Of a DNA stretch of 64,000 nucleotides, positions 1,502 to 27,482 are shown in pieces. The translations under genes and the position numbers were made by a program. The DNA is taken from IMG/VR virus record IMGVR_UViG_3300028800_000001, positions 248,001 to 312,000 of that record; one strand, given 5' to 3'. The notes below the pieces were generated by a model, which searched no databases, was not told where the DNA came from, and saw only the letters and a program-made list of their open reading frames with translations. Numbering within the stretch: position 1 is the first letter of the stretch; the number at the start of each line of letters is the position of its first letter.

Positions 1502-1888
1502 GTGGAACATCAGTTTGAGCCATATAAAGAGGTTTATTATCAGTGTGCGCGCTGTCACTTGATTGTGCGCACCACAAACTTTACAGGGGGCAATGCCTTT
1601 GTGCAGGAGCTTGCTGTGTGTCAGGAGCAGCCTGTCTATCAGACCATTCCGAAAGAGCTTGCCAATAAATCCTGGTTTACAAAGCAGGCGCTAGAAACCA
1701 CCGCAGAAATTGTGGGCTACTATGTCAATCCTACACATGTGCGACCTGCTTTTATTGGGCTCTATCCAAAGAACACAGCGCGCCCCAAAGCAAAGAAGCG
1801 TCCAACTGATGCAACCTATCGTCGTGCTGCACGTGCTGTTGGCATAGTGATTAAAGATGAGGAGAAGAAATCATGGGGAAAAAGCTAG
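1502..1888 (+). CDS. hypothetical protein (CxxC, basic C-terminus)
   Basis: GGAGG SD before GTG start; 128 aa; overlaps next gene. Confidence 0.55.
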   Translation: MEHQFEPYKEVYYQCARCHLIVRTTNFTGGNAFVQELAVCQEQPVYQTIPKELANKSWFTKQALETTAEIVGYYVNPTHVRPAFIGLYPKNTARPKAKKRPTDATYRRAARAVGIVIKDEEKKSWGKS

Positions 1889-2427
1889 CCTTTCTTTTCC
1901 TGCTACTTCTTCTGCTTGCAGGGTGTGGAAGTGTGCAAGCATCTGCTTCACCAAAAGCCATCACATTTCCAAAGGACACACCACACTTTGCAGGGCCACT
2001 GTATTACTTTTCACAGCACTACGGTGTACCCAACAATCACAGTGATCCGAAGAGCAATACGTTTGCCTTTGGGCGCTACGCAGGCACACAAAAAGATGCA
2101 GTGGTGCTACGCACCGCAGGAGATAATCCACAGGTCAGTGCACAGCATGTCTTCTATCTAGTGTTGTACTCGTATCAGGTTGGTTGGGCAAGAACGCAGG
2201 CATTGAACATCTGTAGGGCACTCTTACCGTCTGATGCACATCCACTTCGTCACTTTGCCTATTCATGGAATAGCAATTTTGAAGAAATGTATACCTCTGC
2301 TTCACTTAAACCATTGTTTCCAAATTATGACTATTCAGGGGCCGCACCAGGAACCATCTCCATCTATTATGTCTTGCGCGATGATGGTAGTGTGGATCGG
2401 TGTTTGTTCCTTTTAGGAGTGGAGTGA
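1873..2427 (+). CDS. putative lipoprotein
   Basis: MGKK + hydrophobic stretch + LAGC lipobox; GGAG SD. Confidence 0.75.
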   Translation: MGKKLAFLFLLLLLLAGCGSVQASASPKAITFPKDTPHFAGPLYYFSQHYGVPNNHSDPKSNTFAFGRYAGTQKDAVVLRTAGDNPQVSAQHVFYLVLYSYQVGWARTQALNICRALLPSDAHPLRHFAYSWNSNFEEMYTSASLKPLFPNYDYSGAAPGTISIYYVLRDDGSVDRCLFLLGVE

Positions 2428-2550
2428 GGAAAGGACAGACGAGCGATCATAGCCAGAGATAACGTTGAAACAGTCCAGCGTGCTAGCGAGAGTTCGTCCC
2501 TTCCTCACGGCTTCCAATGTGCATCTTCTCAGTGCACTCTTGTCAACCTG
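2424..2550 (-). ncRNA. candidate small RNA (divergent unit of sRNA cluster)
   Basis: Minus-strand TG-G-TATACT at 2564-2556, short GTGCA hairpin, then 12-bp stem GTGAGGAAGGGA/TCCTTTCCTCAC; no credible ORF. Confidence 0.35.
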
Positions 2551-2578
2551 GAAAAAGTATACCATAAAAAGAGGTATG

Positions 2579-2637
2579 AATTAATTAATTTTTAAAAAAG
2601 AATTTCTTGCGCAAGAAGAAAAAATAATTAATTAATT
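2579..2637. promoter_or_regulatory. paired AATTAATT motif, copy 1 of 6
   Basis: Two AATTAATT blocks about 43 bp apart between divergent sRNA promoters. Confidence 0.55.
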
Positions 2638-2699
2638 TCACTCTCTACCCATTTTTCCTAGTTGCTGGAGTCTTTTCGCAAAGCTGTGCTACAGTGATC

Positions 2700-2839
2700 A
2701 GGCAGTAGTCGGTTGAAAAACCGAGGGAAAAGGCAGTGCAAAGAGTTATCTCTTTAGGGAGGAAAGAAGTCAGCTTTGGTGAGCGTTTCGCTGGGCTTCT
2801 TTTTGAAGAGGTATCACCACTCTTTGCATTGCCTTTTTT
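2700..2839 (+). ncRNA. candidate small RNA unit 1
   Basis: Extended -10 TGCTACAGT 2687-2695; GAAA-tetraloop hairpin 2709-2724; 19-bp basal stem 2728-2746/2819-2837 with further inner stems; U tract. Confidence 0.6.
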
Positions 2840-2862
2840 CTGAAAATCTGCTATACTTTTTA

Positions 2863-2963
2863 TGCGGTATCCTCTTTCTATAGGATCGCACTCAAGCAGA
2901 AATGGAACCTTGCTTTCTTTCCCAGGCGACAAGGAAAGGGAGCGCGTAAGAGGTTCCATTTTT
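2863..2963 (+). ncRNA. candidate small RNA unit 2
   Basis: TTGCCT-17-TATACT (2829-2857); 5' hairpin 2863-2890; long bulged hairpin 2900-2961 with G-U pairs on + strand; U tract. Confidence 0.6.
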
Positions 2964-2989
2964 GTTGTGCTTTTTGCTATGCTAGAGAG

Positions 2990-3061
2990 GTAGTGTGAAA
3001 GCAGCAGGGGGCAAGTGGCATTCGGTATGCGTCGGAAGTACTTGTCTTGTGCTGCTTTCTT
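2990..3061 (+). ncRNA. candidate small RNA unit 3
   Basis: Extended -10 TGCTATGCT 2975-2983; stems 2997-3006/3050-3059 and 3008-3016/3040-3048. Confidence 0.5.
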
Positions 3062-3094
3062 GACAGTATTTTTCCCTCCATGCTACACTTGGCT

Positions 3095-3201
3095 GTGTAG
3101 TGGAAACGCTATGCTTTGGTTTTCAAGAAAGAGGAAAGATACCTTCTTCCACAGAAAATTGGGTACTGTGTGCGTTTTTCTGTCGGTATCTTTCCTCTTT
3201 T
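3095..3201 (+). ncRNA. candidate small RNA unit 4
   Basis: TTGACA-18-TACACT with TG extension (3060-3089); GAAA-tetraloop hairpin 3095-3114; perfect 16-bp stem 3128-3143/3185-3200 plus inner 8-bp stem. Confidence 0.6.
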
Positions 3202-3205
3202 CCCA

Positions 3206-4141
3206 TTACAGCGGCCAGAGCTGTGCATTCGTAAAGGTAACGGTTGCAGCGACATTGCCAGGGGTAAGCTGCATTCCTACAAAGCCATGACTACTCTCTG
3301 TATCGGTATAGGTGCCCAGGTCATGCCCATTGAGCTGCACTGTGATTGTTGCATCAACGACGCGCACGTTGAGCACATTTGCCATTCCACGTAAAAAGTA
3401 GGGGGATGCACCAGGGCTTCGATAGAGATAATCGGTTGCAGAGTTGAGTGACCAGCCACCACTCTGGTTAAAGGACAATTGATAGCCTGCATCCACATCA
3501 TTGACACGAAAGAGCAGTCCAACCCCTGATTGTCCATCAGTTACCCCTTGTTGAATAGTCATGGTGACTTGATACACAAAATTGTGAAAATCGCCAGCAG
3601 CGCTCTCAGTATTGCAGCCAATTCCCTGCGTCTTTGCTACAGCAGTGAGGGTATACGCTCCCTGATGAAAATCACAGGAACCACTTTTGACACTATTTTG
3701 TCCTGTATCCCAGCTATAGGTTTGCCCATTATTCGCAAAAAGATCAATGGGCGTGCCTATAACAGGAGGAATGGTAGGTGCTGTAGTGGGATGAGGTGTT
3801 GCCGGAGGCAGAGTAGAAAGAGCCGTGGGTGCTGTCTCACTACTGCGGTGTGAATAGAAGTAATTATAGCCGCCAAGTCCTAAAGAGGCCAGCAATAACA
3901 GAGTGCCAATGAGTTGCAAGCCAATCTCTTTACTTTTCAGGATGAAAGTAAATGCATTCTTATTTATTTGCAAAATTGAGAGTGGAACAGCAACGAGTGC
4001 CAGCAAAAAAGCCATAAGCGCTGTGATCAGGTCTACTTTGGCAACAATGCCAATTACTCCAGCAATCAGGGAAGCTGCAAAGAGGAGAATACCAAACCAC
4101 TGTAAGAGAAGGACGCTTTTTCTCACAGGAGGAGGTGCCAT
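3206..4141 (-). CDS. membrane protein with Pro/Thr linker and extracellular DUF1080/LamG-like beta-sandwich domain
   Basis: 3 TM segments, PT-rich linker, NFVYQVTMTI/GVGLLFR/VQLNGHDLG/GFVGM pattern; start moved to ATG 4141 (AAGGAG SD). Confidence 0.65.
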   Translation of the reverse strand: MAPPPVRKSVLLLQWFGILLFAASLIAGVIGIVAKVDLITALMAFLLALVAVPLSILQINKNAFTFILKSKEIGLQLIGTLLLLASLGLGGYNYFYSHRSSETAPTALSTLPPATPHPTTAPTIPPVIGTPIDLFANNGQTYSWDTGQNSVKSGSCDFHQGAYTLTAVAKTQGIGCNTESAAGDFHNFVYQVTMTIQQGVTDGQSGVGLLFRVNDVDAGYQLSFNQSGGWSLNSATDYLYRSPGASPYFLRGMANVLNVRVVDATITVQLNGHDLGTYTDTESSHGFVGMQLTPGNVAATVTFTNAQLWPL

Positions 4142-4448
4142 AGTGTGCTCCTTATCTATAGGGGCCGCACCTACACCAAAAAAGATGCTTGCATCTTCAG
4201 AATGCCTTTGTAGACGCATTGAGAAGGGTAAGGGACATATTTGCCAGAAAAAGCCCTATCAACATACGTCTCACGCAGCGCGCCCTCAGATTTGCTTCTC
4301 CTTGGCAAAGGTTTTGTGATGAACATTTCTTTTCTAGTGCTTGTACGAAATATTTGTGCACTCTGTTGCATTTTTACCAAAAGGTCCGGTGGAACGTCCT
4401 TCTTGTATGCGCAATACCAAGACAAAAGAAAGAAATGAGGAAAAAAGA

Positions 4449-9236: not shown

Positions 9237-9398
9237 ATGTGGACGATTTTAGGTCTTTTTATTGCAGTTGTTCTTACCATCCTTTTAGTCTTCTGGCTCT
9301 ACATCTGGATATGGTACACCAGACGTGGTGGCGTTGAAGGGCCATCCGAAGCCATTTCTGAGTGGATCAATGTGTGGATCGAATCTCACTCCAATTAA
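9237..9398 (+). CDS. 53-aa single-pass membrane protein (below ORF-track cutoff)
   Basis: GGAGG SD; MWTILGLFIAVVLTILLVFWLYIWIWY. Confidence 0.55.
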   Translation: MWTILGLFIAVVLTILLVFWLYIWIWYTRRGGVEGPSEAISEWINVWIESHSN

Positions 9399-11981: not shown

Positions 11982-12563
11982 TTATGTTGCAAAGTGGAAG
12001 ATGATTGCAAAGATCACGCTTGCGGTGGCAACCAGAATGCCAGAGGCCGCAATGATGTAGCTCCAGAGTTGGGATGCCCCTAGACTTCTCCCAACGGCTG
12101 AACTGTGTGAAGCACGCAAGTCATTGACCTGTCGTTGGAGCTCTTCATGACGTGTTTCATAGGCAGAAAGAGAAAGCAATTGTGTCATAGCAAGGCGCAA
12201 ATCAGCTTCAGCTTGACTGTGGGCATCCGAATTTTTCTCGATCAGTTTTCGTAAGGCTTCTATTTTTCCTTCAAGAGAGGTGGTAAGTGCTAATACTTCA
12301 TTGCGTGGAATATAGGTCTTGGTTTGATCAGCCATTGCTGCGCGAAAACCATTCATGGCCTCAAAGCGCTTGTCGGTTGCGGTTTCCGCTTTTAAAATGG
12401 CCTTTTCAGAAGAGGTAAAAGCAATGATCATTGCTTCTTTTTGAGCTGTATGAGAAGCGTCCATTGCAGCCTGCAAAGCATGAAAACGCTCTTCATAGTT
12501 TTTCTGTCGCTCTTCAAGAATGCGTTCAAAGAACGTCTTGAGATCAATGTTCATCTTCACCAA
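11982..12563 (-). CDS. coiled-coil protein with C-terminal TM anchor
   Basis: AQKEAMIIAFTSSEKAILKAETAT; C-terminal hydrophobic helix. Confidence 0.65.
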   Translation of the reverse strand: MVKMNIDLKTFFERILEERQKNYEERFHALQAAMDASHTAQKEAMIIAFTSSEKAILKAETATDKRFEAMNGFRAAMADQTKTYIPRNEVLALTTSLEGKIEALRKLIEKNSDAHSQAEADLRLAMTQLLSLSAYETRHEELQRQVNDLRASHSSAVGRSLGASQLWSYIIAASGILVATASVIFAIIFHFAT

Positions 12564-14134
12564 TCCTCAAAGATGCCACGCTCCATTGCGCCGCCATTTT
12601 GTTCAGTACTCTCGAAAGGTTTCTCAGGAAGTATCTCTTCTGTACTTTCTTCACCTAAAAGCCGCATATTCGGTTGATTAGGATTGAAAAGCACCTCGCA
12701 ACCACGACTCACAGTGTCCACGACATCATCATGCGCCCCTTTGGGGAAGTTGAGCAGTTCTTTCTCCATAATCGTGAGGTATTCAGCAAACTGGAGATGA
12801 TAGACTTGACCAGCTTCGTAAAAGACACTGGCAGAAATAGCACGTGACACTTTATCTTTGTGTGGTGTAAACGGACGTACTGGGATGCCCCAACGGACAA
12901 TAAGCTCTTGAGTCATCGTGAGCTGAAAAGCGGTCGCCTCGATTTCCACAAAATTATGCCGATACCGCTGGTAGCAGAGGGCAATTGCTCGTTGTATCTC
13001 AGGGCCGGTCATATGATCACGTTGCTGCTCTACTAAGAGCAGTTCATTATCAGGGGTTGCAGCCCAGGTGGAGATCACGGTGTAGTCAGCCGTTGTCTTG
13101 AGACTCGCTGCAAGGTCAACGGTGGCAAAGAGCCAACACTTTGCACGTGCCACATTTTTGTCACCATAGCGGGTATGCAGGGTATAGTGATTTTCATGAA
13201 TCGTGAAGTAGACAAAGTGCTCTTGTTTGAAAATATCGCCACCAAGAGGGGAAGGACTTTGCTGATACTGTGCTGCGTAGGCTGAAGAGCCCAAAGCAAC
13301 TTTTAACTTCTCCAGCTCTCGGTGTCCAACTTGTGCAGGCCAGAGCAATTGTCCTTCTTCAGTGCGCGGGTCTTCCCAGCCAATTTCGGTGTAGCAGCGG
13401 CGAGACGGCTCATACTCGGCTGGTAAGCAGAGATGCGTATAGCCACCTTGTTCAAGCACATGACCTGAGAGATCACGCTCGTGGATGCGCTGCATGATAA
13501 TGACTTTTGATCCCTTCTTCGGATCATTGAGACGCGAAGACATCGTCGTGTCCCACCATAACAGTGCTTCTTCGCGTTTTGTATCAGAATAGGCTTCAAG
13601 CACGTTATGCGGATCATCCACTAGTAGGGCGTCGCCACCTTCACCAGTTGCCGCTGAACCTACGGAAACTGCCATACGGTAGCCTCTGTGATTGTTCTCA
13701 AATCTTCCCTTGGCTTTTTGGTCTTTAGAGAGATAGAAGCAATTACCATAGCGTGCCTGAAACCAGTCTGATTCGATGAGGATCTTGCACTTGCGGTTGT
13801 CTCGAATAGCCAGCGACAGTGCGTAGGAGGAGCAGAGCCAGCGCTTAGCGGGGGTATCGATCCAACTCCACATCGGCCAAAAGACACTCACAATCAGGCT
13901 CTTCGCGTGTCGAGGAGGAATGTTGATCAGCAGGTTACGGATATCGCCTCTATTGACTGCCTCCAGGTGATCAATGAGTGCATCAATGTGCCAACCAGGA
14001 ACATACGGTGTGGTTGGCTCAATGACGTGCCATGCCTGCTTTACAAATTCACGCAGGTCACGGCGTCCTTGTTCTGCTTTCACCCGTTCTAATAAAGAAA
14101 GTGGGGAATGTGGGAATGTGGGAATCGCCACCAT
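12557..14134 (-). CDS. terL: terminase large subunit
   Basis: INIPPRHAKS Walker A, ATGEGGDALLVDDPH Walker B, IMQRIHERDLSG, AQYQQSP, TVDLA and HDDVVD RNase H-like nuclease motifs. Confidence 0.95.
   Translation of the reverse strand: MVAIPTFPHSPLSLLERVKAEQGRRDLREFVKQAWHVIEPTTPYVPGWHIDALIDHLEAVNRGDIRNLLINIPPRHAKSLIVSVFWPMWSWIDTPAKRWLCSSYALSLAIRDNRKCKILIESDWFQARYGNCFYLSKDQKAKGRFENNHRGYRMAVSVGSAATGEGGDALLVDDPHNVLEAYSDTKREEALLWWDTTMSSRLNDPKKGSKVIIMQRIHERDLSGHVLEQGGYTHLCLPAEYEPSRRCYTEIGWEDPRTEEGQLLWPAQVGHRELEKLKVALGSSAYAAQYQQSPSPLGGDIFKQEHFVYFTIHENHYTLHTRYGDKNVARAKCWLFATVDLAASLKTTADYTVISTWAATPDNELLLVEQQRDHMTGPEIQRAIALCYQRYRHNFVEIEATAFQLTMTQELIVRWGIPVRPFTPHKDKVSRAISASVFYEAGQVYHLQFAEYLTIMEKELLNFPKGAHDDVVDTVSRGCEVLFNPNQPNMRLLGEESTEEILPEKPFESTEQNGGAMERGIFEDW
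14104..14125 (+). repeat. Triple 8-bp direct repeat GGGAATnT, copy 2 (inside 5' end of terL)
   Basis: GGGAATGT GGGAATGT GGGAAT. Confidence 0.7.
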
Positions 14135-15535: not shown

Positions 15536-16324
15536 TTAACAATTGTGGAAGCGATACGGGATCGAAGCCGCATCTAGCTTATCAGTGATTGCTTTGGTTG
15601 CATACTTACGCTCCATGAAGACCACTTCTTCAATGTGCTTCACGCGTAACCCCTTGTGATACTGCACCTCTGGATAGGAACGCACCTGCTGCACACTGGT
15701 ATAGGAGAGGACGGTGTTGAGGTAACTGGTATCCACTGCTCGGTGATCAGGCGCGGCTACTGGCATTGCCACCAGTTCCATATAGCCACCAAGAGATGCC
15801 TTTCCCAGGCTGTCATCAAACGTAAAGGTCGCTTTACGAGCCACTACATCACGCTTGAACTTTACGGCGATTTGGCCGTACATGCCAACGCTATCACGGC
15901 TTCCTCCCAGCTCACCGTCTGGACTATTGGTCATATATCCGTAGACCGGACGTTTGGTTGGCTCCATATCTTCTGGATAGGAGAACATTGCCAGCTCAAA
16001 CCTTGCGCGTCCGTCAGGATGATACGAGCCACAAGAGTTCCCTGTTTCAAACTGTGATTTGAAGCGTCCTTCCTCAAGAATCTTTTCGAAGGCCGTAGAA
16101 CGAACACGCATCCAAAGACCACTTTCGTCTACCAGCTTTTTGACGTGGGCGTCTACCAGCTTTAAAAAAGCTTCAGCCGTGATGCCACGATAATTTGCAT
16201 GATATTTGACGGTATTCTCAGCATCCTTGTCATAGACGGCCAACATCTTGTCAGAAGGGCGAACATCTTTCAGACGATTGGATGCACCAGGAAAGCGTTT
16301 TGTCGTTGCAACAGCGGTACCCAT
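15536..16324 (-). CDS. DUF3626-like domain protein (putative ADP-ribosyltransferase), no KYN tag
   Basis: WMRVR, GRFKSQFETG, RPVYGY, YGQIAVKFK, TFTFDDSL, YPEVQYHKGL. Confidence 0.7.
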   Translation of the reverse strand: MGTAVATTKRFPGASNRLKDVRPSDKMLAVYDKDAENTVKYHANYRGITAEAFLKLVDAHVKKLVDESGLWMRVRSTAFEKILEEGRFKSQFETGNSCGSYHPDGRARFELAMFSYPEDMEPTKRPVYGYMTNSPDGELGGSRDSVGMYGQIAVKFKRDVVARKATFTFDDSLGKASLGGYMELVAMPVAAPDHRAVDTSYLNTVLSYTSVQQVRSYPEVQYHKGLRVKHIEEVVFMERKYATKAITDKLDAASIPYRFHNC

Positions 16325-16337
16325 AATAATCTCCTTG

Positions 16338-16413
16338 AATTAATTATTTTTTTATTTTCCCGCGTAAATCTCTTTACAAAATTAATTATATGCCACTAGT
16401 ATGTAAAAGACAA
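16338..16413 (-). promoter_or_regulatory. sigma70 promoter overlapped by paired AATTAATT motif
   Basis: TTGTCT(16413-16408)-17-TATAAT(16390-16385); AATTAATT at 16338 and 16380. Confidence 0.75.
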
Positions 16414-16456
16414 GCTTTTCTTCTATGAATATTCAGAAATACAGAAAAGTGGTACT

Positions 16457-17398
16457 TTACGCATGTGGGTTTTTTGCACGATAGGGAATGCCCAATGCTT
16501 TCAGCTTTTTTACGACTGCGGGTTTGATGTCAGAGCCGTTCTCAAAGACGACTTCAGCAATGTGAGACGTGTTGACGCCACCATGATATTGTGCTTCAGG
16601 GTACGTAGGAACTTCAGCAAGACTGGCATACTTGAGAGGGCTGTCATATTTGAGTGCTGCGAAGCCTGTATGATCTGGCTTTGAGAGTGCAGAAGGCAGC
16701 AAATAGCCAGCAGAAGAGAGTGAATCGTTGCCTGTCCAGGTTGTGTTGTCTTTTATACTCTCTTTTAAGCGTACGGAGACAGAGCCGTACATATCAACGG
16801 TGTCACCCCAACCGGCCTTTGTGGGATCAGCACTTTTGAGGCGTCCATCGCCGTCAGCCGAGAGATAGCCGTATATCGGACGATCTTCATCTTCAGTTTT
16901 CATTTGGTCGTAGCCAAAAAGGTCTTCTTCCACACTAGCGCGATGCCAAACATCCAATAATCCGCCAGATTTACCGGTTTCATGTTGTGATTTGAAGCGA
17001 CCATCTGTCAACACCTTGCCGAGTATTTGTGGACGCACTCGTATCCAGGGCTGTGCATCCTTAAAGAGATCAACTGCTTTTTGATCAAGCGCTTTGGTGT
17101 AGTCTTCAACGCTCATGCCAGCTTTGGCTGCTTTAAATGCAAAGACCGTGGCCTTATTGTTGTTATACTTATCAATGATTGCTTGTGGTGGTTTGAGCTT
17201 TTGTAAAATCTTAGGCACAAGGTTATTGGGATGCAGTGGATTCTTCGGTCCTGGCGTTCTGGTGCCATCGCGTGCCACAATCAGGTGCGCTTCTCCTGCG
17301 GTAGAAAAGCGTCCAAGATGATCATGATGTGGGTTGTACTTCTCTTGAAGTTGCAGCACAAGACGTTTAATCAGCCGAATGTCTTTTTGAAAATACAT
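16457..17398 (-). CDS. KYN-tagged DUF3626-like protein
   Basis: EKYNPHHDHLGRFST; WIRVRP, GRFKSQHETG, RPIYGYL, YPEAQYHGGV. Confidence 0.7.
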   Translation of the reverse strand: MYFQKDIRLIKRLVLQLQEKYNPHHDHLGRFSTAGEAHLIVARDGTRTPGPKNPLHPNNLVPKILQKLKPPQAIIDKYNNNKATVFAFKAAKAGMSVEDYTKALDQKAVDLFKDAQPWIRVRPQILGKVLTDGRFKSQHETGKSGGLLDVWHRASVEEDLFGYDQMKTEDEDRPIYGYLSADGDGRLKSADPTKAGWGDTVDMYGSVSVRLKESIKDNTTWTGNDSLSSAGYLLPSALSKPDHTGFAALKYDSPLKYASLAEVPTYPEAQYHGGVNTSHIAEVVFENGSDIKPAVVKKLKALGIPYRAKNPHA

Positions 17399-17466
17399 AC
17401 AAATCTCCAGGCAGAAAAAAGTGTGGTTGCTTTTTATTTTGTGTGAAGATTTGTATGAACGAAGTT

Positions 17467-17715
17467 TTACGAAGCAGGAATGATTTTGACACCTTTGAGC
17501 AATTCTTCTAGCTTGTTTTGGTCACCATCATACTTTTGCCAGGGATCACGTGCTCCCAGCGATACTAAGGGAAGGGGTGGATACAGTGTTTTACTATTGA
17601 GATCTAACACACACCCATATTTCAGGTCTTTGTTTCCGTGTTCTGGCACGTCGGCTGAGAGGACATAAAGATTGGGATCGTCAGGATGCGATGCAATGAT
17701 TGTTTGTTTTCCCAT
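17467..17715 (-). CDS. small paralogous protein (putative immunity family) copy 2
   Basis: GCVLDLNSKTLYPPLPLVSLGARDPWQKYDG; AAGGAG SD. Confidence 0.65.
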   Translation of the reverse strand: MGKQTIIASHPDDPNLYVLSADVPEHGNKDLKYGCVLDLNSKTLYPPLPLVSLGARDPWQKYDGDQNKLEELLKGVKIIPAS

Positions 17716-17731
17716 TGGGGGTTTCTCCTTA

Positions 17732-18178
17732 CTATGCAACTTTCTTTACTACTACTAATAACAAATTTTTGAGTGCCAAAATTTCTGCATCCTGTGCTTC
17801 AAGATGCTTTTTTAGCTCTTCATTTTCATGAAAGATCTTGAGCGTGGTTTGATACGTTTCTTCCGCTTGCAATTGCTGATGTCTTCCTAACACGTCTTGC
17901 CCGACCGATAAAATTGATAAGGCAACTAATTGGATGAATGTCTGGCTTGTCCACTGCACATACTGATTGGCGGTTGCATGAAAACCAGGAAAGCCAAGGA
18001 TGGCAAGAAATACAAAGAAGTAAGCACACCACATGTTGCTGAGCACATTGGTTACAAAAACCGCCACACGTTGATTGAAGCCACCTGCTTTGCGTTCTAA
18101 TGCTTGCAACACATTGACGTTACGCACTTTGTGTGGGTGTTCTTTGTGTTCATATAAAGTTACTTTGTGATCACTCAT
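17732..18178 (-). CDS. DUF1003-like membrane protein
   Basis: FNQRVAVFVT...MWCAYFF, WTSQTFIQLVALSILSVGQ, coiled-coil tail. Confidence 0.55.
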   Translation of the reverse strand: MSDHKVTLYEHKEHPHKVRNVNVLQALERKAGGFNQRVAVFVTNVLSNMWCAYFFVFLAILGFPGFHATANQYVQWTSQTFIQLVALSILSVGQDVLGRHQQLQAEETYQTTLKIFHENEELKKHLEAQDAEILALKNLLLVVVKKVA

Positions 18179-18191
18179 CGCTTCCTACTTC

Positions 18192-19529
18192 TTACGAATA
18201 ATAAAAGGTCACACCAGGGCAGTTGGCTACCCCATTGGAAACAATGCCTACGGAAGCACGACCACCTCCACCAATGCTATAAATGCTGCCAACTGTAGCA
18301 TTGGCTGGAATAGAAAGCAGCTTTGTTCCACTATTGGTGGTGGCATTGTCATAGATATCAAGCTGCGCGGTTCCGGTCGTTGTCACTACTGCACTCCAAA
18401 GATAGCCAGGAGTGCCTTTGACCACCACATTACCTGCGGTATTGGCAGCTTGCGCAGCGTTCGCCGTCGCTCCAGCCGTGAGCCATGGATTCGTATTTTG
18501 TGTATTTCCAGGCTGCACTGTCCAGGTTCCTGCTTGCGCACTTTGCATCCCACCAGGAGCAGAACTACTGGTGTAGAGCTCTAGTGTCGCGTTTGCGGTG
18601 CCGCTGGTATACGCCGTCATGCGCACACGAAAGTAGCGAAACGTCACCGCTCGTTCATAGATGACACTCACTGTATTGGTAGTAGTTGAGAGTAGTGAGC
18701 CACTGGTAACATTGGTCATGAGCACATTGACAAAAGCAGCGCCATCATTAGAACCTTGAAATGTGAGTGTTCCTGAATAGGCACTAGAACTAATATGAAT
18801 ACTCAGCCATTTATACGCACTGACATCTGTAGAGGGAACCAGATCAGCATTGAGTGATGCGGCGCTCAGCCCTGTTTGTTCAGTAAAGTTTCCTCGTACT
18901 GCCTGTGAACCAGCGGCGTCTATCATTGCTTTATTTGTGCCAGCGCTATCAACCACAGTGACTCCACCGACAAGATTGCTTCCAGCAGGAAGGCTAGAGA
19001 GCAAACTAATATCACCGGTTGCAGCGCTTGCATTTAAGGTTACCGTGAGTGTTTCTGTACTTCCAAGCACACTTGCACGCACACGTATCTTTGTCAGCCC
19101 TGCACAATTTCCTCCTAGCTCCAACGGGCCAGGGCCAACAATGCTTTGCACTGATGTGCTGGTCAAAGAGCCGCCCACTTTTATCCCTTTGGCGATCCAG
19201 TTTGTGCCATCGACACTGCCATCGACCACGATTGTTGTTGCAGAAGTAAAAGTGCTCAGTGCCACAATTTCTGCTTTCCAGCTTCCTTGACCAGCACCAA
19301 GAGAAAGGACAACGGTGCCACCAGCAATCGGTGTTTGCTGCGTGCTTTGTGCAGCAGTAATCGTACCGCTTACGCTGAGATCGCTCGTGCTACTGTAAAG
19401 TGGGTTGACAGCAACTCCCAACGCATTATCAGACGTATCCACAAGCACTGTTGGGTGCACAATCATTACCGTACTGTTCGGGCCGGTGTCCACGCCTGGG
19501 ACGGTTGGCTCTGTTTGATTAATAGGCAT
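18192..19529 (-). CDS. Ser/Thr/Gly-rich beta-repeat protein, probable virion appendage
   Basis: GSVDGTNW and QGSNDG...RYFRVR repeats; N-terminal 45 aa nearly identical to 20665-21117. Confidence 0.55.
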   Translation of the reverse strand: MPINQTEPTVPGVDTGPNSTVMIVHPTVLVDTSDNALGVAVNPLYSSTSDLSVSGTITAAQSTQQTPIAGGTVVLSLGAGQGSWKAEIVALSTFTSATTIVVDGSVDGTNWIAKGIKVGGSLTSTSVQSIVGPGPLELGGNCAGLTKIRVRASVLGSTETLTVTLNASAATGDISLLSSLPAGSNLVGGVTVVDSAGTNKAMIDAAGSQAVRGNFTEQTGLSAASLNADLVPSTDVSAYKWLSIHISSSAYSGTLTFQGSNDGAAFVNVLMTNVTSGSLLSTTTNTVSVIYERAVTFRYFRVRMTAYTSGTANATLELYTSSSAPGGMQSAQAGTWTVQPGNTQNTNPWLTAGATANAAQAANTAGNVVVKGTPGYLWSAVVTTTGTAQLDIYDNATTNSGTKLLSIPANATVGSIYSIGGGGRASVGIVSNGVANCPGVTFYYS

Positions 19530-20663
19530 CTATTGTATCCTTCCACTGGTGTGCCGCATTTCCCTGATATAAGGAGAGCCCACCACTGCTTTATAGAGTG
19601 AGTTGAGAAAGAAGTTCAGCCAGAGATTTTGATAGGCTACGTAGCCTGCGGGAAGTGTGGGATGAATATTGTCCACATCAATTAAGCTTTGATGCGTAGA
19701 AAAATACGCATAGAGATCAGGGCCAAGAATGATGGACGGAAAACTGGCTTTGAGTGTCAAGATCTTGGTATTAATTGTAGGCGCATTCGCCAGTAAATTC
19801 GTCGTATTGCCCCAACAAATTGTCTTTGGTAATACCACCGTTTTCCCAGCACCAATCACGGCATTGATCATGGTGGTCATGTTACTGATAAAATTCGTGA
19901 CGTACGTTCCGCCCTGGTTTGCATCATTGGTACCGTAGAGGAGTCCCACATATTTACCAGGAAAGAGTGCAAGCCACGTCGCAATATTGGCCGCGCCTTC
20001 GACTGCCGTAAACCCACCAATGCCGCCATCCTCCATCAAAGGAAAATTGCTGACCTGGGCATTGATTTGTGCAGGGAGTGTGGTATCGGTGTGCAAAAAA
20101 CCTTGTTGCGCAATAGAGTCGCCATAAAAGATCCAATCATCAGCCAGCCCATTTGCTTTATGCACATCCATATTGATCTGCACATTATTGTTAGAAACCG
20201 ATCCATTGATTGCAGTGATGCGAATGCGCACCCATTTGTACCCAGTGAGATTCACACTATGCTGACGGCTGTGATAGACGTTTCCGGTTACCGTCGCAAG
20301 CGTTATCCATCCACTTGAGGGTAAACTTCCACCGGCTGCACTATTGGCATCAATCGTGTAAGCAGCAGGAACGTTATAGGAATTATTGCTAATCAAGGTC
20401 GGATCATAGGCACCCGTTGAGGGATCGTTATACCAGACCACAACAGCCGTCGTGAGACTACTCACACCAGAAAGATCATAGGCCAGATACACGGCTTGCG
20501 TCAGCGTGCCACTGTCTGTATTTCCTGTGGGTGCTGTGAGGCAACGCCAATAATTGCCATACGTGCTGTCGTTGGCTTGCGAGGCTGGAAACGCACCTGA
20601 AAAGTCATCATTGGTATAGGCAGGCACACCACGTGAGATCAGGGGCATTGGAGCTATCGTCAT
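19530..20663 (-). CDS. SGNH/GDSL hydrolase with N-terminal carbohydrate-binding-like domain
   Basis: FYGDSI, GIGG, YGTNDA, DNIHP blocks. Confidence 0.8.
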   Translation of the reverse strand: MTIAPMPLISRGVPAYTNDDFSGAFPASQANDSTYGNYWRCLTAPTGNTDSGTLTQAVYLAYDLSGVSSLTTAVVVWYNDPSTGAYDPTLISNNSYNVPAAYTIDANSAAGGSLPSSGWITLATVTGNVYHSRQHSVNLTGYKWVRIRITAINGSVSNNNVQINMDVHKANGLADDWIFYGDSIAQQGFLHTDTTLPAQINAQVSNFPLMEDGGIGGFTAVEGAANIATWLALFPGKYVGLLYGTNDANQGGTYVTNFISNMTTMINAVIGAGKTVVLPKTICWGNTTNLLANAPTINTKILTLKASFPSIILGPDLYAYFSTHQSLIDVDNIHPTLPAGYVAYQNLWLNFFLNSLYKAVVGSPYIREMRHTSGRIQ

Positions 20664-20664
20664 A

Positions 20665-21117
20665 TTAATTCCAAGCCCTGACTACAATATTGCTCGCGCT
20701 TGTTCCATTGACGTTGCTAATGCCTGGAGTATAGAGATGCAGCGCTGTTACCTGCACATCCAAAAATAGCGTTTGTCCAGCAGCGAGTACTGGGCTTCCT
20801 GCGGTAGCTGTAACATCTAAGTCCCATTGGATATTGCTAGCCGTGTTATTTTGCACCATCAAATGTGAGATAACGGTGGTGCCAGCGGCTCCCCATTTAA
20901 AACTATAATCAGTGGTAGCCGCCGTTGCCGCGCCATTAGAGGCGTAGGCTGCAACGTAGCCTGATTGGACGGTTTGTTCAACAAAGAGAGGGTTGGCAAC
21001 AATCCCAAAGGCATTATCAGAGGTATCTACAAGCACGCTTGGATGCACAATCATCGTGGTGCTATTGGGGCCAGTATCGACACCAGGAACGGTTGGTTCA
21101 GTTTGGTTGAGTGGCAT
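20665..21117 (-). CDS. small beta-rich protein, probable virion accessory
   Basis: MPLNQTEPTVPGVDTGPNST leader shared with 18192-19529. Confidence 0.55.
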   Translation of the reverse strand: MPLNQTEPTVPGVDTGPNSTTMIVHPSVLVDTSDNAFGIVANPLFVEQTVQSGYVAAYASNGAATAATTDYSFKWGAAGTTVISHLMVQNNTASNIQWDLDVTATAGSPVLAAGQTLFLDVQVTALHLYTPGISNVNGTSASNIVVRAWN

Positions 21118-21191
21118 TGTTTTCTCCAGTACAAATCATTGCAACAGAAATGCTATTTTTGTTTGTACTGAAGAATTTAGGAGAAATACAG

Positions 21192-22109
21192 TTATTTTTG
21201 TTCGTGGCCTTGCAGGGCAAATGCAGTGCGATCTTCCCCAATGCAGAGCCAGAGATTTTCAAACAAGAGTGCTTCGGCAGGAACACTCATTGTTGGAAAA
21301 GCAGCATCTTTGTCAATATACGCTAAAGTGCAGTGTGGTGTAAAGCCATGTGTGTTGTCAATAGGAACAGGCAGAGACGTTCGAAGCTGTTCACGCCACT
21401 CTGCTATCCCTGGAAGGTCTACAGAGGCGTAAAACGGCAGCGTAGCGCTCTCTGTGGGGGTGTTTGTGAAGCACCCGATCCCTGAGACAATGCCATGTAC
21501 CGGAACCGCGTTTGTCGCATAGTCACCGATTGCTTTTTTGAGCTGTGCGGAAAGGGCATCAGGAACATTCTCAGCGCTTCCTAGTATCATCAAAGTGACA
21601 TGCAGCTCTTGTGGCTCACATTTCCCTTCACAGTCCAGTGCTATTTTTTGTGCGGCATCTGGCTCCAGATAAAATGCCACCATGATTGGCAAGGCCGACA
21701 CAGGTTTAGGTTGCTCTGGTGTTTCTTCTTTGCGTAGCCACAGCGTCTTTAAAAAAGAAACATGCTCTTCGTTGGCGCGAAAGATTGGCGTCTGCAAAAA
21801 GTCTTTGACAGCTATATCGTGTGCTGCAAGATAGCCAATTAATTGTTCTTCATTCTTGACAGGCAACGTCCATGTCGTCTCTTCAAAGATGCTTTTCTTC
21901 TTTGCAGGTTCTTCATCTGAAAGGGTTGCGCGCTCCTCTTCTGGGAGATCATCAAGATTTTCACAAGGCAGCACACGATTCAAAAAATCTTCACGTGCTT
22001 CATCAGTCAATTGGTGCCGTTGCAAAAACTTGGCAACGCGGCGTGAGAGATCAGGTGACATATTGTCAGGTACACTGCTTTTTGCACTATCGTCTTTGAG
22101 TATTTTCAC
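21192..22109 (-). CDS. 2H phosphoesterase (Acb1/2'-5' RNA ligase-like) with N-terminal helical modules
   Basis: Two HxT motifs: ELHVTL and FTPHCTLAY. Confidence 0.8.
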   Translation of the reverse strand: MKILKDDSAKSSVPDNMSPDLSRRVAKFLQRHQLTDEAREDFLNRVLPCENLDDLPEEERATLSDEEPAKKKSIFEETTWTLPVKNEEQLIGYLAAHDIAVKDFLQTPIFRANEEHVSFLKTLWLRKEETPEQPKPVSALPIMVAFYLEPDAAQKIALDCEGKCEPQELHVTLMILGSAENVPDALSAQLKKAIGDYATNAVPVHGIVSGIGCFTNTPTESATLPFYASVDLPGIAEWREQLRTSLPVPIDNTHGFTPHCTLAYIDKDAAFPTMSVPAEALLFENLWLCIGEDRTAFALQGHEQK

Positions 22110-25100: not shown

Positions 25101-25165
25101 AGTGTAAGGTCAGGTTTCTCCTGTTCTTCTATCTCTTTACGAAAGAGAGCATAATGATACTTCAT
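22106..25165 (-). CDS. 1019-aa multidomain effector polyprotein: degenerate kinase + helical module + DUF3626-like + ART-like C-terminal domain
   Basis: Three KYNxxH tags; RFKSQFET/RPLYGYL/YPEAQFHGGL; C-terminal QGFDGPP, LYRGV, GVYGNGTYT, GYDAI, VVLNRT. Confidence 0.7.
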   Translation of the reverse strand: MKYHYALFRKEIEEQEKPDLTLYLPEEKYNRNHSTTTGQFIGADDGAGGVHADVLTTMPAHIAKALSDKGAMTRGADGVYTANINGKTYRIVPTGSTRIAFSQTGASRIADLVGASDTVPVVHSGTVDKEPVVVSEDVKSTPLDDKTATEAMEKMPPDQVTKVGMLEYILGMKQDQSGHYTLNQKTGKINLTQLSSALVKKDIAIQSHSFLMKVIGKSFLRNSIDHGILGKFLTKETKALILSKEYAANDEAALGFAKRFEILHQLAGMKNPTWEDFFKITAHPESQTGGMPPKHPAVPTSVKPLKKPAAAHGAPAAKPHAAPHGKPAHGVIPVPRKKPGHRSHGKMHEPLDLSLYLPEEKQNDEEIDDDTPEHKDQITDAENQAINTIPDTLAPDLVPLVEKFLAGPVAASWTLAERQDFFNRLMGVQSLEDLSARDQELLTGEAKYNPAHGHNGQFTTTENAHLLVHRDGTTEKGPAHPDNQKKDILEQVRPPDAVLKKYDIQGAAFAEKHAQTHNMTAEEYNKAVDDKAVELLKNAEPWMRVRPTILSKILDDERFKSQFETNTSAGIMDHDSRSEAEHDLFGYPDDLAKEQRPLYGYLSDHPDGASLRQTRHGMFDSVDEYGGVAVRFKPEVKQKTTWTGDDSLGMGGYLLPGSMLHPDHTNFSVHGPDPLTYQNVSDVRGYPEAQFHGGLNTSTIAEIVFHNDYELTPPLEAQLKAKGISYRVSGTKSVEQFEEKYNPAHDHVGKFTTTENAHLLVHADGTREKGPKHPDNQEFQKTEAKYSNPEDIPYVKNYMDTGKGPIPGSSSATDADACLQEIYKAQGFDGPPHVVEDNVLAQHIKDGEAELYRGVDDGGDPSDGLGYAASYQSGHYFAGLGVYGNGTYTALTTEGVSDRYSASHVAATYGDDVLHMSVLKNTTAIEKGRLINEWIDYKNDLRTRGKALDDAGKYTESRRIDRLFDLANDPGRYAAMKGYDAIYVDRSHVDSINKRADFLVVLNRTATRVGKTILNGDTL

Positions 25166-25788: not shown

Positions 25789-25905
25789 ACTTGTCTCCCC
25801 AAGAGATAGTTTTCTTTTTCGTATTTGGTATTTCTCTTTGAGAAGATTTGGAGATTTGATGGGGGATTAATTTTTGAGGTTGTTTCTTTTTCTAAGTATT
25901 TTTTA

Positions 25906-26145
25906 TTACATGGTCTCAATAGAGAGTTCGTTGTCCTTTTTTTTAATTTCTTTTGCCCATAAGACACTGGTGAGCGTTTGCAACAAATAGAGGAGAATCT
26001 TTTCATCAGGAAGATGTGTTTCCTCTTTTGCACCAGCAATAACGTTGCGTAATTCTTCCTGTTTTTCTCCTGTATAGGTAAACACCGATGCAGCAAAAGA
26101 AATAGTTCCGTATACCGTTGGCCCGTAGCCAATTTCTAGCGTCAT
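25906..26145 (-). CDS. small protein downstream of kinase; candidate kinase immunity
   Basis: AAGGAG SD; 79 aa; directly follows kinase gene. Confidence 0.5.
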   Translation of the reverse strand: MTLEIGYGPTVYGTISFAASVFTYTGEKQEELRNVIAGAKEETHLPDEKILLYLLQTLTSVLWAKEIKKKDNELSIETM

Positions 26146-26160
26146 ATCATCTCCTTTTTT

Positions 26161-27111: not shown

Positions 27112-27138
27112 CTTACATCTCTCCTGATACAAAAGGAT

Positions 27139-27188
27139 AATTAATTATTTATTTTGTGAGTGCGAGACATTTCTTTTTAAAATTAATT
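27139..27188. promoter_or_regulatory. paired AATTAATT motif
   Basis: AATTAATT at 27139 and 27181 (42 bp apart). Confidence 0.55.
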
Positions 27189-27190
27189 AT

Positions 27191-27469: not shown

Positions 27470-27482
27470 TTTCTTTTCTCCT

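What the first reader, a model, noticed from the sequence alone, without database searches (positions are those of the whole stretch)
2687..3201. Tandem array of four independently promoted long-hairpin small RNAs
About 510 bp without a credible ORF resolves into four head-to-tail units. Each starts with a TGCTAnnnT extended -10 (2687, 2849, 2975, 3081) and ends in a long bulged hairpin of different sequence, with basal stems of 19, 11, 10 and 16 bp. The 3' end of a hairpin overlaps or abuts the next -35 (TTGCCT, TTGACA). Units 1, 2 and 4 have a small 5' hairpin, with GAAA tetraloops in 1 and 4. Non-Watson-Crick pairs are mostly G-U on the + strand, which argues for RNA structure. There is no repeat-spacer identity, so it is not CRISPR. 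I do not recognise the family. Inference: decoy/antitoxin-mimic RNAs, RNA anti-defence factors or trans-acting regulators using their bulges.
Basis: partly seen in the sequence, partly recalled or inferred. Interest (0 to 1): 0.82.

Follow-up and report, generated by a model that had tools for sequence, protein, structure and literature searches.

The report
Four-gene small-RNA cassette in a jumbo phage
A 327-kb uncultured soil phage carries a compact ORF-free cassette of four back-to-back small-RNA genes, each with its own promoter and hairpin terminator; a second phage has the same cassette with base-pair-preserving changes, but what the RNAs do is unknown.

Summary
Window 2687-3201 contains four long hairpins plus a fifth at 2416-2520. 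All fold much better as + strand RNA: 30 G.U pairs against 6 on the other strand, and no A.C mismatches. Each is preceded by a TGCTAnnnT extended -10. P2 and P4 are among the three best sigma-70-like sites in the 64 kb.

The decisive evidence is comparative. Protein-anchored searches found a second rhizosphere phage contig (L097) with the same module in the same order: a leading hairpin, then four promoter-hairpin-U-tract units. Three of its promoters are near-consensus (TTGACA-17/18-TAnnnT). Most of the sequence has diverged beyond alignment. The exceptions are the 5' domain of unit 2 and the apical loop of the leading hairpin. The basal stem of unit 2 shows four compensatory double substitutions and no broken pair. 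No ORF or protein-level similarity is shared.

A third relative (L093) has only one bidirectional terminator at the syntenic site, so the cassette is accessory.

It matches no Rfam family and is not a CRISPR, ToxI, TIGR, tRNA, MITE or type I toxin-antitoxin element. No RNA data exist, so transcription is inferred.

The parts
2416..2520 (+). Leading hairpin H0. It starts at the stop codon of the upstream ORF. The basal stem is 2424-2436/2496-2508. The apical stem-loop at 2462-2482 is 90% identical in L097.
   Evidence: (z -4.5). In L097 the basal stem has a different sequence but still pairs.
2565..2647 (.). Paired AATTAATT boxes about 43 bp apart around a central palindrome. This is an operator-like element inserted between H0 and P1. 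It is absent from the L097 array.
   Evidence: Similar paired boxes sit between promoter and RBS of at least five genes in the window.
2662..2695 (+). Promoter P1: TTGCTG, a 22-nt spacer, then the extended -10 TGCTACAGT. It is the orthologue of L097 PA (TTGACA-17/18-TGCTATAGT).
2702..2843 (+). Unit 1 RNA, about 140 nt. It has a 5' GAAA-loop hairpin (2710-2723) stacked on a 118-nt bulged hairpin (2724-2841) that ends in a U6 tract.
   Evidence: -63.3 kcal/mol, z -6.9; minus strand -43.5. The positional orthologue in L097 folds at -60.5, z -6.4.
2829..2857 (+). Promoter P2: TTGCCT-17-TATACT with a TG extension. The -35 lies inside the 3' arm of H1.
   Evidence: It aligns with L097 PB (TTGCTT-17-TACACT).
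2863..2974 (+). Unit 2 RNA, about 105 nt.
- 5' stem-loop 2863-2890 with a CU-rich loop.
- An invariant segment, AGGATCGCACTCAA, at 2882-2895. Its last five or so bases are single-stranded.
- A long hairpin with basal stem 2900-2910/2951-2961.
- U tracts at 2959-2974.
   Evidence: 77% identity over 71 nt to L097, E 1e-9; 26 pairs, 4 compensatory changes at 2903/2958, 2905/2956, 2906/2955 and 2907/2954, and none broken.
2954..2983 (+). Promoter P3: a weak -35 (TTCCAT), an 18-nt spacer, then the extended -10 TGCTATGCT. The L097 counterpart PC is TTGACA-17-TATACT.
2990..3075 (+). Unit 3 RNA, about 80 nt: a hairpin at 2997-3059 followed by a U-rich tail. A strain variant has A to G at 3013, which turns an A-U pair into G-U.
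   Evidence: -37.5, z -4.4; minus strand -20.2. for the SNP in L085.
3060..3089 (+). Promoter P4: TTGACA-18-TACACT with a TG extension, abutting H3. The L097 counterpart PD is TTGACA-17-TAATAT with TG.
   Evidence: (second-best score in the window).
3095..3205 (+). Unit 4 RNA, about 110 nt. It has a 5' GAAA-loop hairpin (3095-3114, three G.U pairs) and a hairpin at 3127-3201 with a perfect 16-bp base. It ends at the stop codon of the convergent gene 3206-4219(-).
   Evidence: The syntenic site in L093 has a single bidirectional terminator with a related purine-rich 5' arm.

Best explanation
The region is an accessory cassette of four adjacent small non-coding RNA genes, preceded by a conserved leading hairpin.

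**How each unit is built**
- Each unit appears to be transcribed by a sigma-70-type (host) RNA polymerase from its own extended -10 promoter.
- The RNA is predicted to start within a few bases of a 5' stem-loop. In units 2 and 4, and in L097 units A and B, the stem-loop begins 6-7 nt after the -10. In unit 1 it begins about 15 nt after.
- Each unit ends at its own hairpin plus U tract, which directly abuts the next promoter.
- The predicted products are four discrete RNAs of roughly 140, 105, 80 and 110 nt on the + strand.

**Proposed function (inferred)**
- The RNAs act in trans early in infection.
- Unit 2 carries the only strongly sequence-constrained element. This is a 5' stem-loop with a CU-rich, anti-Shine-Dalgarno-like loop, followed by an invariant segment ending in single-stranded CUCAA. 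I read unit 2 as a base-pairing or protein-binding regulator of host or phage mRNAs.
- Unit 1 keeps an unusually long, roughly 45-bp bulged duplex in both phages, far more than termination needs. It may act as a structured dsRNA ligand or decoy, or as an RNase III substrate.
- In units 3 and 4 the hairpins seem to serve mainly as terminators and stabilisers, and they drift by compensatory change.

**What is shown**: structure, strand, promoter-like and terminator-like anatomy, conservation of the architecture, covariation in unit 2, and absence of coding signal.

**What is inferred**: transcription itself, the RNA ends, the timing, and every functional statement.
For: - The structure is strand-specific and far beyond shuffled controls.
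- P4 and P2 score second and equal third among all promoter-like sites in the window. The top site drives another ORF-less RNA at 62 kb. TATACT-type -10 boxes with a TTGAC-type -35 also occur in intergenic regions next to gene starts, at 39932 and 39314.
- L097 holds H0 plus four promoter/hairpin/U-tract units in the same order. It has 7 promoter-like sites against 1.9 expected, and 25 G.U pairs against 10 on the other strand.
- Unit 2 is 77% identical over 71 nt across the terminator tail, the promoter and the 5' domain.
- Unit 2 has 4 compensatory pairs, 100% of cells paired, and 29-62% paired in the slid controls.
- No ORF or tblastx similarity is shared. The ATG of the 43-aa ORF is absent in L097.
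- The only SNP in the array among strains keeps a pair, A-U to G-U.
- The cassette sits in a mosaic accessory island next to a C5 methyltransferase and an NsnA/GmrSD-like nuclease. It is absent from relative L093.
Against: - No RNA data exist: no RNA run could be listed, and the DNA runs are clonal.
- There are only two orthologous arrays, so the covariation statistics have minimal power. The shuffle control bottoms out at 32/500.
- P1 has a 22-nt spacer and P3 a poor -35.
- TGCTAnnnT is not enriched window-wide: 25 observed against about 31 expected.
- Units 3 and 4 are ordinary-sized terminators in L097, so the long hairpin is not a constant of the family.
- No complementary target was found in the window or in L097.
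- The host is unknown.
Confidence: 0.6

Rival explanations
1. The region is a stack of terminators and insulators between convergent transcription units. The hairpins exist to stop transcription from the upstream + operon and from the convergent gene 3206-4219(-). The promoter-like boxes are incidental, or give only abortive or short spurious transcripts with no function of their own.
For: - The array lies between convergent genes.
- In relative L093 the same gap holds exactly one bidirectional terminator, whose 5' arm resembles that of H4.
- Every long hairpin is followed by a U-rich tract.
- Units C and D of L097 are ordinary terminators.
Against: - In L097 the array is followed by co-directional genes, not a convergent one, yet the four units persist.
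- Near-consensus promoters are kept at all four positions in at least one phage.
- The 5' domain of unit 2, which is not a terminator, is the best-conserved sequence.
- The hairpins are poor terminators on the minus strand: there are no U tracts there and folding is much weaker.
- Five hairpins of 60-120 nt are far more than termination needs.
Confidence: 0.15
2. The region is one long structured transcript, such as a 3' UTR or a long ncRNA. It would start upstream, either from the operon or from the AATTAATT-box region, and be processed at the single-stranded linkers. The TGCTAnnnT motifs would then be RNA-level processing or binding sites rather than promoters.
For: - H0 has no U tract, so read-through from the upstream operon is likely.
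- The motif lies in every linker.
- P1 and P3 lack a good -35.
Against: - The motif itself is not conserved as a sequence in L097: PB has AGGTACACT and PC has TTCTATACT.
- What is conserved is the -35/-10 geometry, with TTGACA exactly 17-18 nt upstream. That geometry makes sense only at the DNA/promoter level.
- U tracts follow H1 and H2 directly.
Confidence: 0.1
3. The units encode small leaderless or hairpin-masked peptides, for example type I toxin-like peptides, whose mRNAs fold into long hairpins.
For: - SD-like purine runs sit in the 5' arms (GGGAGG at 2757, AAAGAGG at 3128).
- Small ORFs exist: 35 aa from 2776 and 43 aa from 2862. JGI called a 104-aa ORF on the minus strand.
Against: - None of these ORFs is conserved in L097, and tblastx finds nothing.
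- The 2862 ATG is absent in L097.
- SD-to-start spacings are wrong, and the ORFs run through terminators and promoters.
- The 104-aa ORF has no family hit and was not called in the ENA annotations.
Confidence: 0.04
4. It is a DNA-level element: a replication or packaging signal, a single-strand initiation hairpin, or decayed inverted repeats of mobile elements.
For: The inverted repeats are long and clustered. G.T pairs are also tolerated in single-stranded DNA, so strand asymmetry alone does not exclude a single-strand DNA function.
Against: - There are no further copies of any arm in the window or the related loci.
- No terminal inverted-repeat or target-duplication pattern is present.
- Promoter and terminator geometry is conserved.
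- The module is dispensable in relative L093.
- The 30:0 ratio of G.U to A.C argues against neutral decay of a palindrome.
Confidence: 0.04

Closest known systems
Phage- and prophage-encoded base-pairing small RNAs with their own promoter and intrinsic terminator. Examples from my own knowledge, not tested here: DicF, IsrK, the Pas sRNAs, and sRNAs reported from Pseudomonas phage transcriptomes (PMC10914365).
   Same: These are ORF-less 70-150-nt units with a sigma-70-type promoter, a 5' stem-loop, a single-stranded segment and a terminator hairpin. They sit in accessory regions of mobile genomes.
   Different: - Four unrelated units are packed head to tail, with each terminator abutting the next promoter.
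- No target or chaperone is known.
- No sequence family matches in Rfam 15.
Tandem sRNA gene clusters in bacteria, such as Listeria LhrC1-5 with CU-rich loops that pair with Shine-Dalgarno regions (own knowledge).
   Same: Several small RNA genes lie in a row, each with its own promoter and terminator. A pyrimidine-rich loop is present in the 5' hairpin of unit 2 and in L097 unit B.
   Different: LhrC copies are paralogues of one another. Here the four units share no sequence. The anti-SD-like 5-mer excess is only about 2-fold.
Adenovirus VA RNA I/II and other viral highly structured decoy RNAs (own knowledge).
   Same: These are tandem, independently promoted viral RNAs of about 100-160 nt built around a long imperfect duplex. 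The duplex evolves fast in sequence but keeps pairing.
   Different: VA RNAs belong to a eukaryotic pol III system that targets PKR. No bacterial dsRNA sensor or binding partner is identified here. This is an analogy only.
RNA anti-CRISPRs (Racr, solitary repeat units) and pseudo-ToxI antitoxin mimics.
   Same: They are phage-encoded, promoter-driven small structured RNAs that act as decoys against host defence.
   Different: Those are defined by similarity to a host CRISPR repeat, or by tandem 34-45-nt direct repeats. Neither is present here.
TIGR-Tas stem-loop arrays (PMC12045711).
   Same: They are arrays of hairpin units with differing stems, found in phage genomes.
   Different: TIGR arrays need an adjacent Nop-domain Tas protein and box C/D motifs in the loops, and they yield 36-nt guides from one precursor. 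Here there is no box C, no Nop protein, and the units are 80-140 nt with their own promoters.
T7-type RNase III processing hairpins and bidirectional intrinsic terminators.
   Same: They are long imperfect intergenic hairpins with internal loops, followed by U tracts. The syntenic site in L093 is a plain bidirectional terminator.
   Different: T7 sites lie between genes in polycistronic mRNAs. Here there are no genes between the hairpins, and each hairpin has its own promoter.

Membership tests
Any Rfam 15 family | Covariance-model score at or above the family's gathering threshold | tested here: not met
   There are no gathering-level hits in the window. The E-value scan gives only sub-threshold miRNA-precursor models, which are generic long hairpins. 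The L097 array gives nothing at all.
CRISPR array / solitary repeat unit (Racr) | Near-identical direct repeats of about 24-48 nt separated by spacers, or one unit resembling a host CRISPR repeat | tested here: not met
   The repeat finder gives only short direct families, none above about 91% identity. Resemblance to the host's repeat cannot be tested because the host is unknown.
Type III toxin-antitoxin RNA (ToxI-like) | Tandem direct repeats of 34-45 nt next to an endoribonuclease toxin gene | tested here: not met
   There are no tandem repeats. The flanking proteins have no ToxN/AbiQ-type hit in Pfam or PADLOC.
TIGR-Tas array | An adjacent Nop-domain Tas protein, with box C (RUGAUGA) and box D (CUGA) motifs in each unit | tested here: not met
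   There is no RTGATGA or TGATGA in either array. No Nop domain is found in the neighbouring proteins of the window or L097. The definition is taken from PMC12045711.
tRNA / tmRNA | ARAGORN-detectable cloverleaf or tmRNA | tested here: not met
   No genes are found in the window.
Type I toxin-antitoxin / small-peptide gene | A conserved small ORF with a ribosome-binding site | tested here: not met
   No ORF is shared between the two arrays, tblastx finds nothing, and the start codon is not conserved.
MITE / Correia-like repeat | Multiple copies with terminal inverted repeats | tested here: not met
   No second copy of any arm occurs in the window or in about 1 Mb of fetched loci. The rest of the 327-kb genome was not searched.
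Sigma-70-type promoter (each unit) | A -35 and -10 hexamer 16-18 nt apart, or an extended -10 TGnTAnnnT | tested here: met
   P2 and P4 pass the scan and rank equal third and second in the window. P1 and P3 have only the extended -10. The L097 counterparts PA, PC and PD are TTGACA-17/18-TAnnnT. Promoter activity itself was not tested.
Intrinsic (Rho-independent) terminator (each unit) | A stable stem directly followed by a U tract | tested here: inconclusive
   H1 and H2 are followed by U6 and U5 tracts. H3 and H4 have weaker pyrimidine-rich tails. The scan tool cannot score loops longer than 8 nt, so it flagged only the 5' hairpin of unit 4.
Trans-acting base-pairing sRNA | Own transcription unit, a conserved accessible seed, and a complementary target | tested here: inconclusive
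   The transcription-unit anatomy and a conserved segment in unit 2 are present. No target above chance was found in the window or L097. The host genome is unavailable.
Retron / DRT non-coding RNA | An adjacent reverse transcriptase gene | tested here: not met
   No RT domain is found in the neighbouring ORFs.

The most novel reading that the evidence does not exclude
The cassette is a new kind of RNA-only counter-defence or host-takeover module of jumbo phages. It would be a set of early, highly expressed structured RNAs. The roughly 45-bp duplex of unit 1 would act as a decoy or inhibitor of a host dsRNA- or structured-RNA-sensing factor. The anti-SD-like loop of unit 2 would silence specific host mRNAs. 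The module would be exchanged as a unit among phages within accessory islands that also carry methyltransferase and nuclease genes.
Probability: 0.15. Interest if true: 0.8.

Novelty: new member of a known kind. Interest (0 to 1): 0.5.

Why it matters
Non-coding RNAs of uncultured jumbo phages are almost uncharted. Annotation pipelines either leave this region empty or call a spurious 104-aa ORF across it.

This is a compact cassette of at least four unrelated sRNA genes. Two mosaic phages share it, a third lacks it, and its stems evolve by compensatory change. That gives a concrete, testable entry point into RNA-based phage-host interaction in soil bacteria. It also provides two new RNA families (unit 2 and H0) with enough conserved sequence to search for. 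If the RNAs prove to be decoys or host-mRNA silencers, the cassette would add an RNA-only module to the known anti-defence repertoire.

If the RNAs are merely stable by-products of promoter/terminator stacking, the cassette remains a useful example of how such stacks evolve.

Tried and rejected
**Searches that found nothing useful**
- Rfam at gathering and E-value thresholds, on both arrays: nothing meaningful.
- tRNA/tmRNA scan: none.
- megablast and blastn against 50,697 isolate phages: no match.
- Sequencing runs: ten rhizosphere DNA runs hold the region, but no RNA run could be listed. Laying the contigs of four runs gave zero differences, so there is no population variation to exploit.
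- The flanking 184-aa protein has no relative anywhere. The 181-aa protein has none in IMG/VR.
- Terminase relatives are about 40% identical phages of around 50 kb. One fragment is 77% identical but loses synteny after window position 10516.
- A sliding-energy and Lfold density metric for hairpin arrays was too unspecific to serve as a background test, so I dropped it.

**Target searches**
- Duplex energies of each unit against 95 translation-initiation regions were no better than shuffles.
- The complement of the invariant unit-2 segment occurs only at chance level.

**Motif search for unit 2**
- The motif search in viral, metagenome and genome collections returned only the two known arrays, one chance hit, and one CRISPR spacer.
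- The spacer matches only the 21 bases forced by the pattern.
- None of the other 39 spacers hits the phage, and no protospacer was found. I treat the spacer match as coincidence.

**Other**
- Covariance model R1 found no paralogue of unit 2.
- TIGR-Tas was considered and rejected.
- An AlphaFold model of the neighbouring 128-aa protein family was too poor to use, at pLDDT 47.
- Sequence-based alignments of H0 and of unit 1 against unit A are unreliable. Their alifold pair counts were not used as evidence.
Full report
**Origin and setting**

The window is part of IMGVR_UViG_3300028800_000001, a 327,295-bp phage contig from a rhizosphere metagenome.
- It encodes a large terminase at 12557-14134.
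- It also encodes Tet/JBP oxygenases, an amino-acid:DNA transferase and many DUF3626 paralogues.
- No isolate phage is close. The terminase is at most 41% identical to any, so the host is unknown.

The finding lies in a 778-bp gap (2428-3205).
- Upstream is a + strand operon: a C5 methyltransferase, an NsnA/GmrSD-like nuclease, a 128-aa protein and a 184-aa protein.
- Downstream is a convergent gene for a DUF1080-type protein at 3206-4219(-), followed by a NUDIX gene.

**Check of the observation**

- The inverted repeats are 2728-2746/2819-2837 (19 nt, 95%), 2897-2910/2951-2964 (14 nt, 93%), 2997-3016/3040-3059 (perfect 10-bp base) and 3128-3143/3185-3200 (16 nt, 100%).
- TGCTAnnnT occurs at 2687, 2849, 2975 and 3081. 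There are only 25 copies on both strands of the window, so about 0.1 is expected in 515 bp.
- The consensus scan reports TTGCCT-17-TATACT and TTGACA-18-TACACT, both with a TG extension.
- In my own scan of the whole window, these two score equal third and second. The top site is the promoter of another ORF-less RNA at 62 kb.

The region folds far better than shuffles and far better on the + strand.
- Whole region: -216.6 kcal/mol (z -9.3) on + against -156.8 (z -6.9) on -.
- Each unit taken alone gives z of -6.9, -4.6, -4.4 and -4.8 on +. Each is 8-20 kcal/mol weaker on -.
- The + strand stems contain 30 G.U pairs and no A.C single mismatch. The - strand folds have 6 G.U pairs. A palindrome decaying at the DNA level would give both kinds equally.

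The small 5' hairpins and the GAAA loops are as described.

**Finding relatives**

Direct routes failed.
- There were no Rfam, blastn or RNA-seq hits.
- The same clonal sequence appears in all DNA runs.

The flanking proteins gave the leads.

*L093.* The DUF1080 protein has a 45% identical homologue on an 11-kb Logan contig, L093.
- L093 keeps the synteny: NUDIX, DUF1080, a gap, one ORF, then a homologue of the 128-aa protein.
- Its gap is only 129 bp and holds a single bidirectional terminator. That terminator folds equally well on both strands, and its purine-rich 5' arm resembles that of H4.

*L097.* A profile of the 128-aa family then found a third member.
- It lies on a 14.4-kb ENA contig, L097. 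Identical shorter contigs exist in JGI 3300029957 and in a Logan run.
- In L097 that gene is followed by a 963-bp ORF-free gap.

**The second array**

L097 9263-9975 has the same plan as the window.

| Position | Window | L097 |
|---|---|---|
| Leading hairpin | H0, 2416-2520 | 9263-9339 |
| Promoter 1 | P1: TTGCTG, 22-nt spacer, TGCTACAGT | PA: TTGACA-17/18-TGCTATAGT |
| Promoter 2 | P2: TTGCCT-17-TATACT | PB: TTGCTT-17-TACACT |
| Promoter 3 | P3: TTCCAT-18-TATGCT | PC: TTGACA-17-TATACT |
| Promoter 4 | P4: TTGACA-18-TACACT | PD: TTGACA-17-TAATAT with TG |

- The apical 21 nt of the leading hairpin are 90% identical between the phages. The basal stem is entirely different but still paired.
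- Each L097 unit is followed by a structured RNA and a U tract.
- The scan finds 7 promoter-like sites in this stretch of L097 against 1.9 expected.
- As in the window, the + strand folds better (for example unit A, -60.5 against -39.0) and carries 25 G.U pairs against 10.

Most of the transcribed sequence cannot be aligned.
- The exception is a 71-nt block that is 77% identical (E 1e-9). It spans the U-rich tail of unit 1, promoter 2 and the 5' domain of unit 2.
- In the consensus fold of unit 2 and unit B, all 26 pairs are kept in both sequences.
- Four adjacent pairs of the basal stem have changed on both sides: window 2903/2958, 2905/2956, 2906/2955 and 2907/2954.
- Sliding the 3' partners by 1-3 columns drops pairing to 29-62% and removes all double changes.
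- With two sequences the shuffle test cannot go below 32/500. This is qualitative rather than statistical support.

No coding signal is shared.
- The ORFs in the two gaps do not correspond, and tblastx finds nothing.
- The ATG of the window's 43-aa ORF is missing in L097.

The only polymorphism in the array among strain variants is 3013 A to G in L085. It converts an A-U pair of hairpin 3 into G-U.

**What differs between the two arrays**

- Units 1/A and 2/B are long hairpins in both phages. Unit 1 and unit A each have about 45-50 pairs, at about -60 kcal/mol.
- Units C and D of L097 end in ordinary 11-18-bp terminators. The exceptional hairpin length is therefore conserved only for the first two units.
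- The window has an extra element between H0 and P1. It is a pair of AATTAATT boxes about 43 bp apart around a palindrome at 2565-2647.
- The same paired boxes lie between the promoter and RBS of at least five genes in the window.
- The right-hand neighbours also differ: a convergent gene in the window, co-directional genes in L097. The region is mosaic. The cassette behaves as a self-contained, dispensable module.

**Interpretation**

The best-supported reading is a cassette of four independent small non-coding RNA genes.
- Promoter geometry is conserved where the sequence is not. A hexamer exactly 17-18 nt upstream of a TAnnnT box makes sense only for DNA recognised by RNA polymerase.
- In units 2 and 4, and in L097 units A and B, a 5' stem-loop begins 6-7 nt after the -10 box. 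That is where transcription should start, and it is the usual arrangement for a stable RNA. In unit 1 the stem-loop begins about 15 nt after the -10.
- Each RNA ends in a hairpin with a U tract that abuts the next -35.

Function is inferred only.
- Unit 2 has a sequence-constrained 5' hairpin with a pyrimidine-rich loop (CCUCUUUCU in the window, UCCUUCUUUU in L097). This is followed by an invariant 14-nt segment whose end is single-stranded.
- That is the anatomy of a base-pairing or protein-binding regulator, and the loop resembles an anti-Shine-Dalgarno sequence.
- The excess of such 5-mers is only about 2-fold, and no target was found in the sequence available.
- The conserved, very long duplex of unit 1 suggests a role as a double-stranded RNA ligand, a decoy or an RNase III substrate.
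- The sigma-70-like promoters suggest early expression by the host polymerase.
- The setting among methyltransferase and nuclease genes is compatible with a role in host takeover or counter-defence, but does not show it.

**Rivals**

- *A terminator stack between convergent genes.* L093 supports this. L097, where the downstream genes are co-directional, argues against it, as do the conserved promoters and the non-terminator domain of unit 2.
- *A single processed transcript.* This is made unlikely by the conserved -35/-10 geometry.
- *Small-peptide genes.* The comparison rejects these.
- *A DNA-level element.* This fits neither the 30:0 G.U bias nor the absence of other copies.

**Comparison with known systems**

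The module fails the defining tests for CRISPR/Racr, ToxI-type antitoxins, TIGR-Tas arrays, tRNA/tmRNA, MITEs, type I toxin-antitoxin systems and retron/DRT RNAs (see the membership table). It has no Rfam family.

In kind it belongs with phage-encoded small RNAs. In layout it recalls tandem sRNA clusters such as LhrC1-5, and by analogy only, the adenovirus VA RNAs. I therefore rate it a new member of a known kind. It comprises new RNA families in an unusual four-gene cassette, with function unknown.

**Limits**

- No expression data exist.
- Only two orthologues are known.
- The host is unknown.
- Only 64 kb of the 327-kb genome, plus fragments of relatives, could be examined.

Noticed in passing
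window 61995-62360: This is the best sigma-70-like promoter in the window (TTGACA-17-TGCTATACT, 61995-62023). It faces away from the surrounding minus-strand genes. It is followed by an ORF-poor, structured stretch of about 280 nt that ends in a perfect 16-bp terminator (62274-62306) and a second hairpin (about 62313-62358). No Rfam family matches. It is probably another phage ncRNA gene.
   Followed up: partly
window 2579/2626, 16338/16380, 27139/27181, 41186/41229, 54899/54943 (degenerate copy at 32759): Pairs of AATTAATT boxes about 39-44 bp apart recur in intergenic regions. In several copies the first box overlaps the -10 of a TTGTCT-17-TATAAT promoter and the second lies just before the RBS. 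This looks like the operator of a phage regulator. One copy sits directly upstream of the RNA cassette.
   Followed up: partly
window 2836, 9439, 61978; L097 9397 and 9593: The palindrome TTTTCWGAAAA, or a near-copy, lies in or beside several of the sRNA-type promoters: the P2 spacer, upstream of the 62-kb RNA promoter, and at PA and PB in L097. There are 9 matches with at most 1 mismatch in the window against 3.3 expected.
   Followed up: partly
window 15536-29465 and 31052-38485: There is a large DNA-modification repertoire. At least six DUF3626-domain paralogues are present (15536, 16457, 22106, 27483 and 28518, among others). There are also two Tet/JBP dioxygenases (31052-31960, 33588-34436) and an amino-acid:DNA transferase (37580-38485). 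A C5 methyltransferase lies just upstream of the window. Together these suggest hypermodified cytosine or thymidine in this phage.
   Followed up: no
window 41279-43855: The 858-aa RadD/SF2-type helicase carries an intein. The intein C-terminal splicing motif is at residues 407-428, and the helicase motifs are split around it.
   Followed up: no
L085/L090 versus L086 (about 2-4 kb upstream of window position 1): Strain variants of the same phage replace the 384-aa C5 methyltransferase with an unrelated 325-aa protein, next to the NsnA/GmrSD-like nuclease. This is a hot spot of accessory-gene exchange adjacent to the RNA cassette.
   Followed up: no
L101 395-425 and L105 1541-1571: A spacer of a type I-C-like CRISPR array matches the two anchor segments of the unit-2 5' domain, 21 of its 34 nt, and nothing else. 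The repeat begins GTCGCTCCTCGCATGAGGAGC and ends GATTGAAAT. None of the other 39 spacers hits the phage, and no protospacer was found in IMG/VR. It is probably chance, but worth rechecking if relatives are found.
   Followed up: yes
window 21192-22109: This is a 2H-phosphoesterase (LigT-like, 2'-5' RNA ligase superfamily) protein. It indicates RNA repair or processing capacity in the phage.
   Followed up: no
window 1502-1888; L093 5982-6356; L097 8903-9277: A tiny protein family of three members among 1.8 billion representatives has a CxxC...C pattern and a basic KAKKRP tail. In two of the three phages it lies just upstream of the RNA cassette. Its function is unknown and the AlphaFold model is unusable.
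   Followed up: partly
window 2645-2959 (-): JGI annotated a 104-aa ORF here. It runs antisense through hairpins 1 and 2, has no RBS, no family and no counterpart in L097. It is almost certainly a false gene call.
   Followed up: yes
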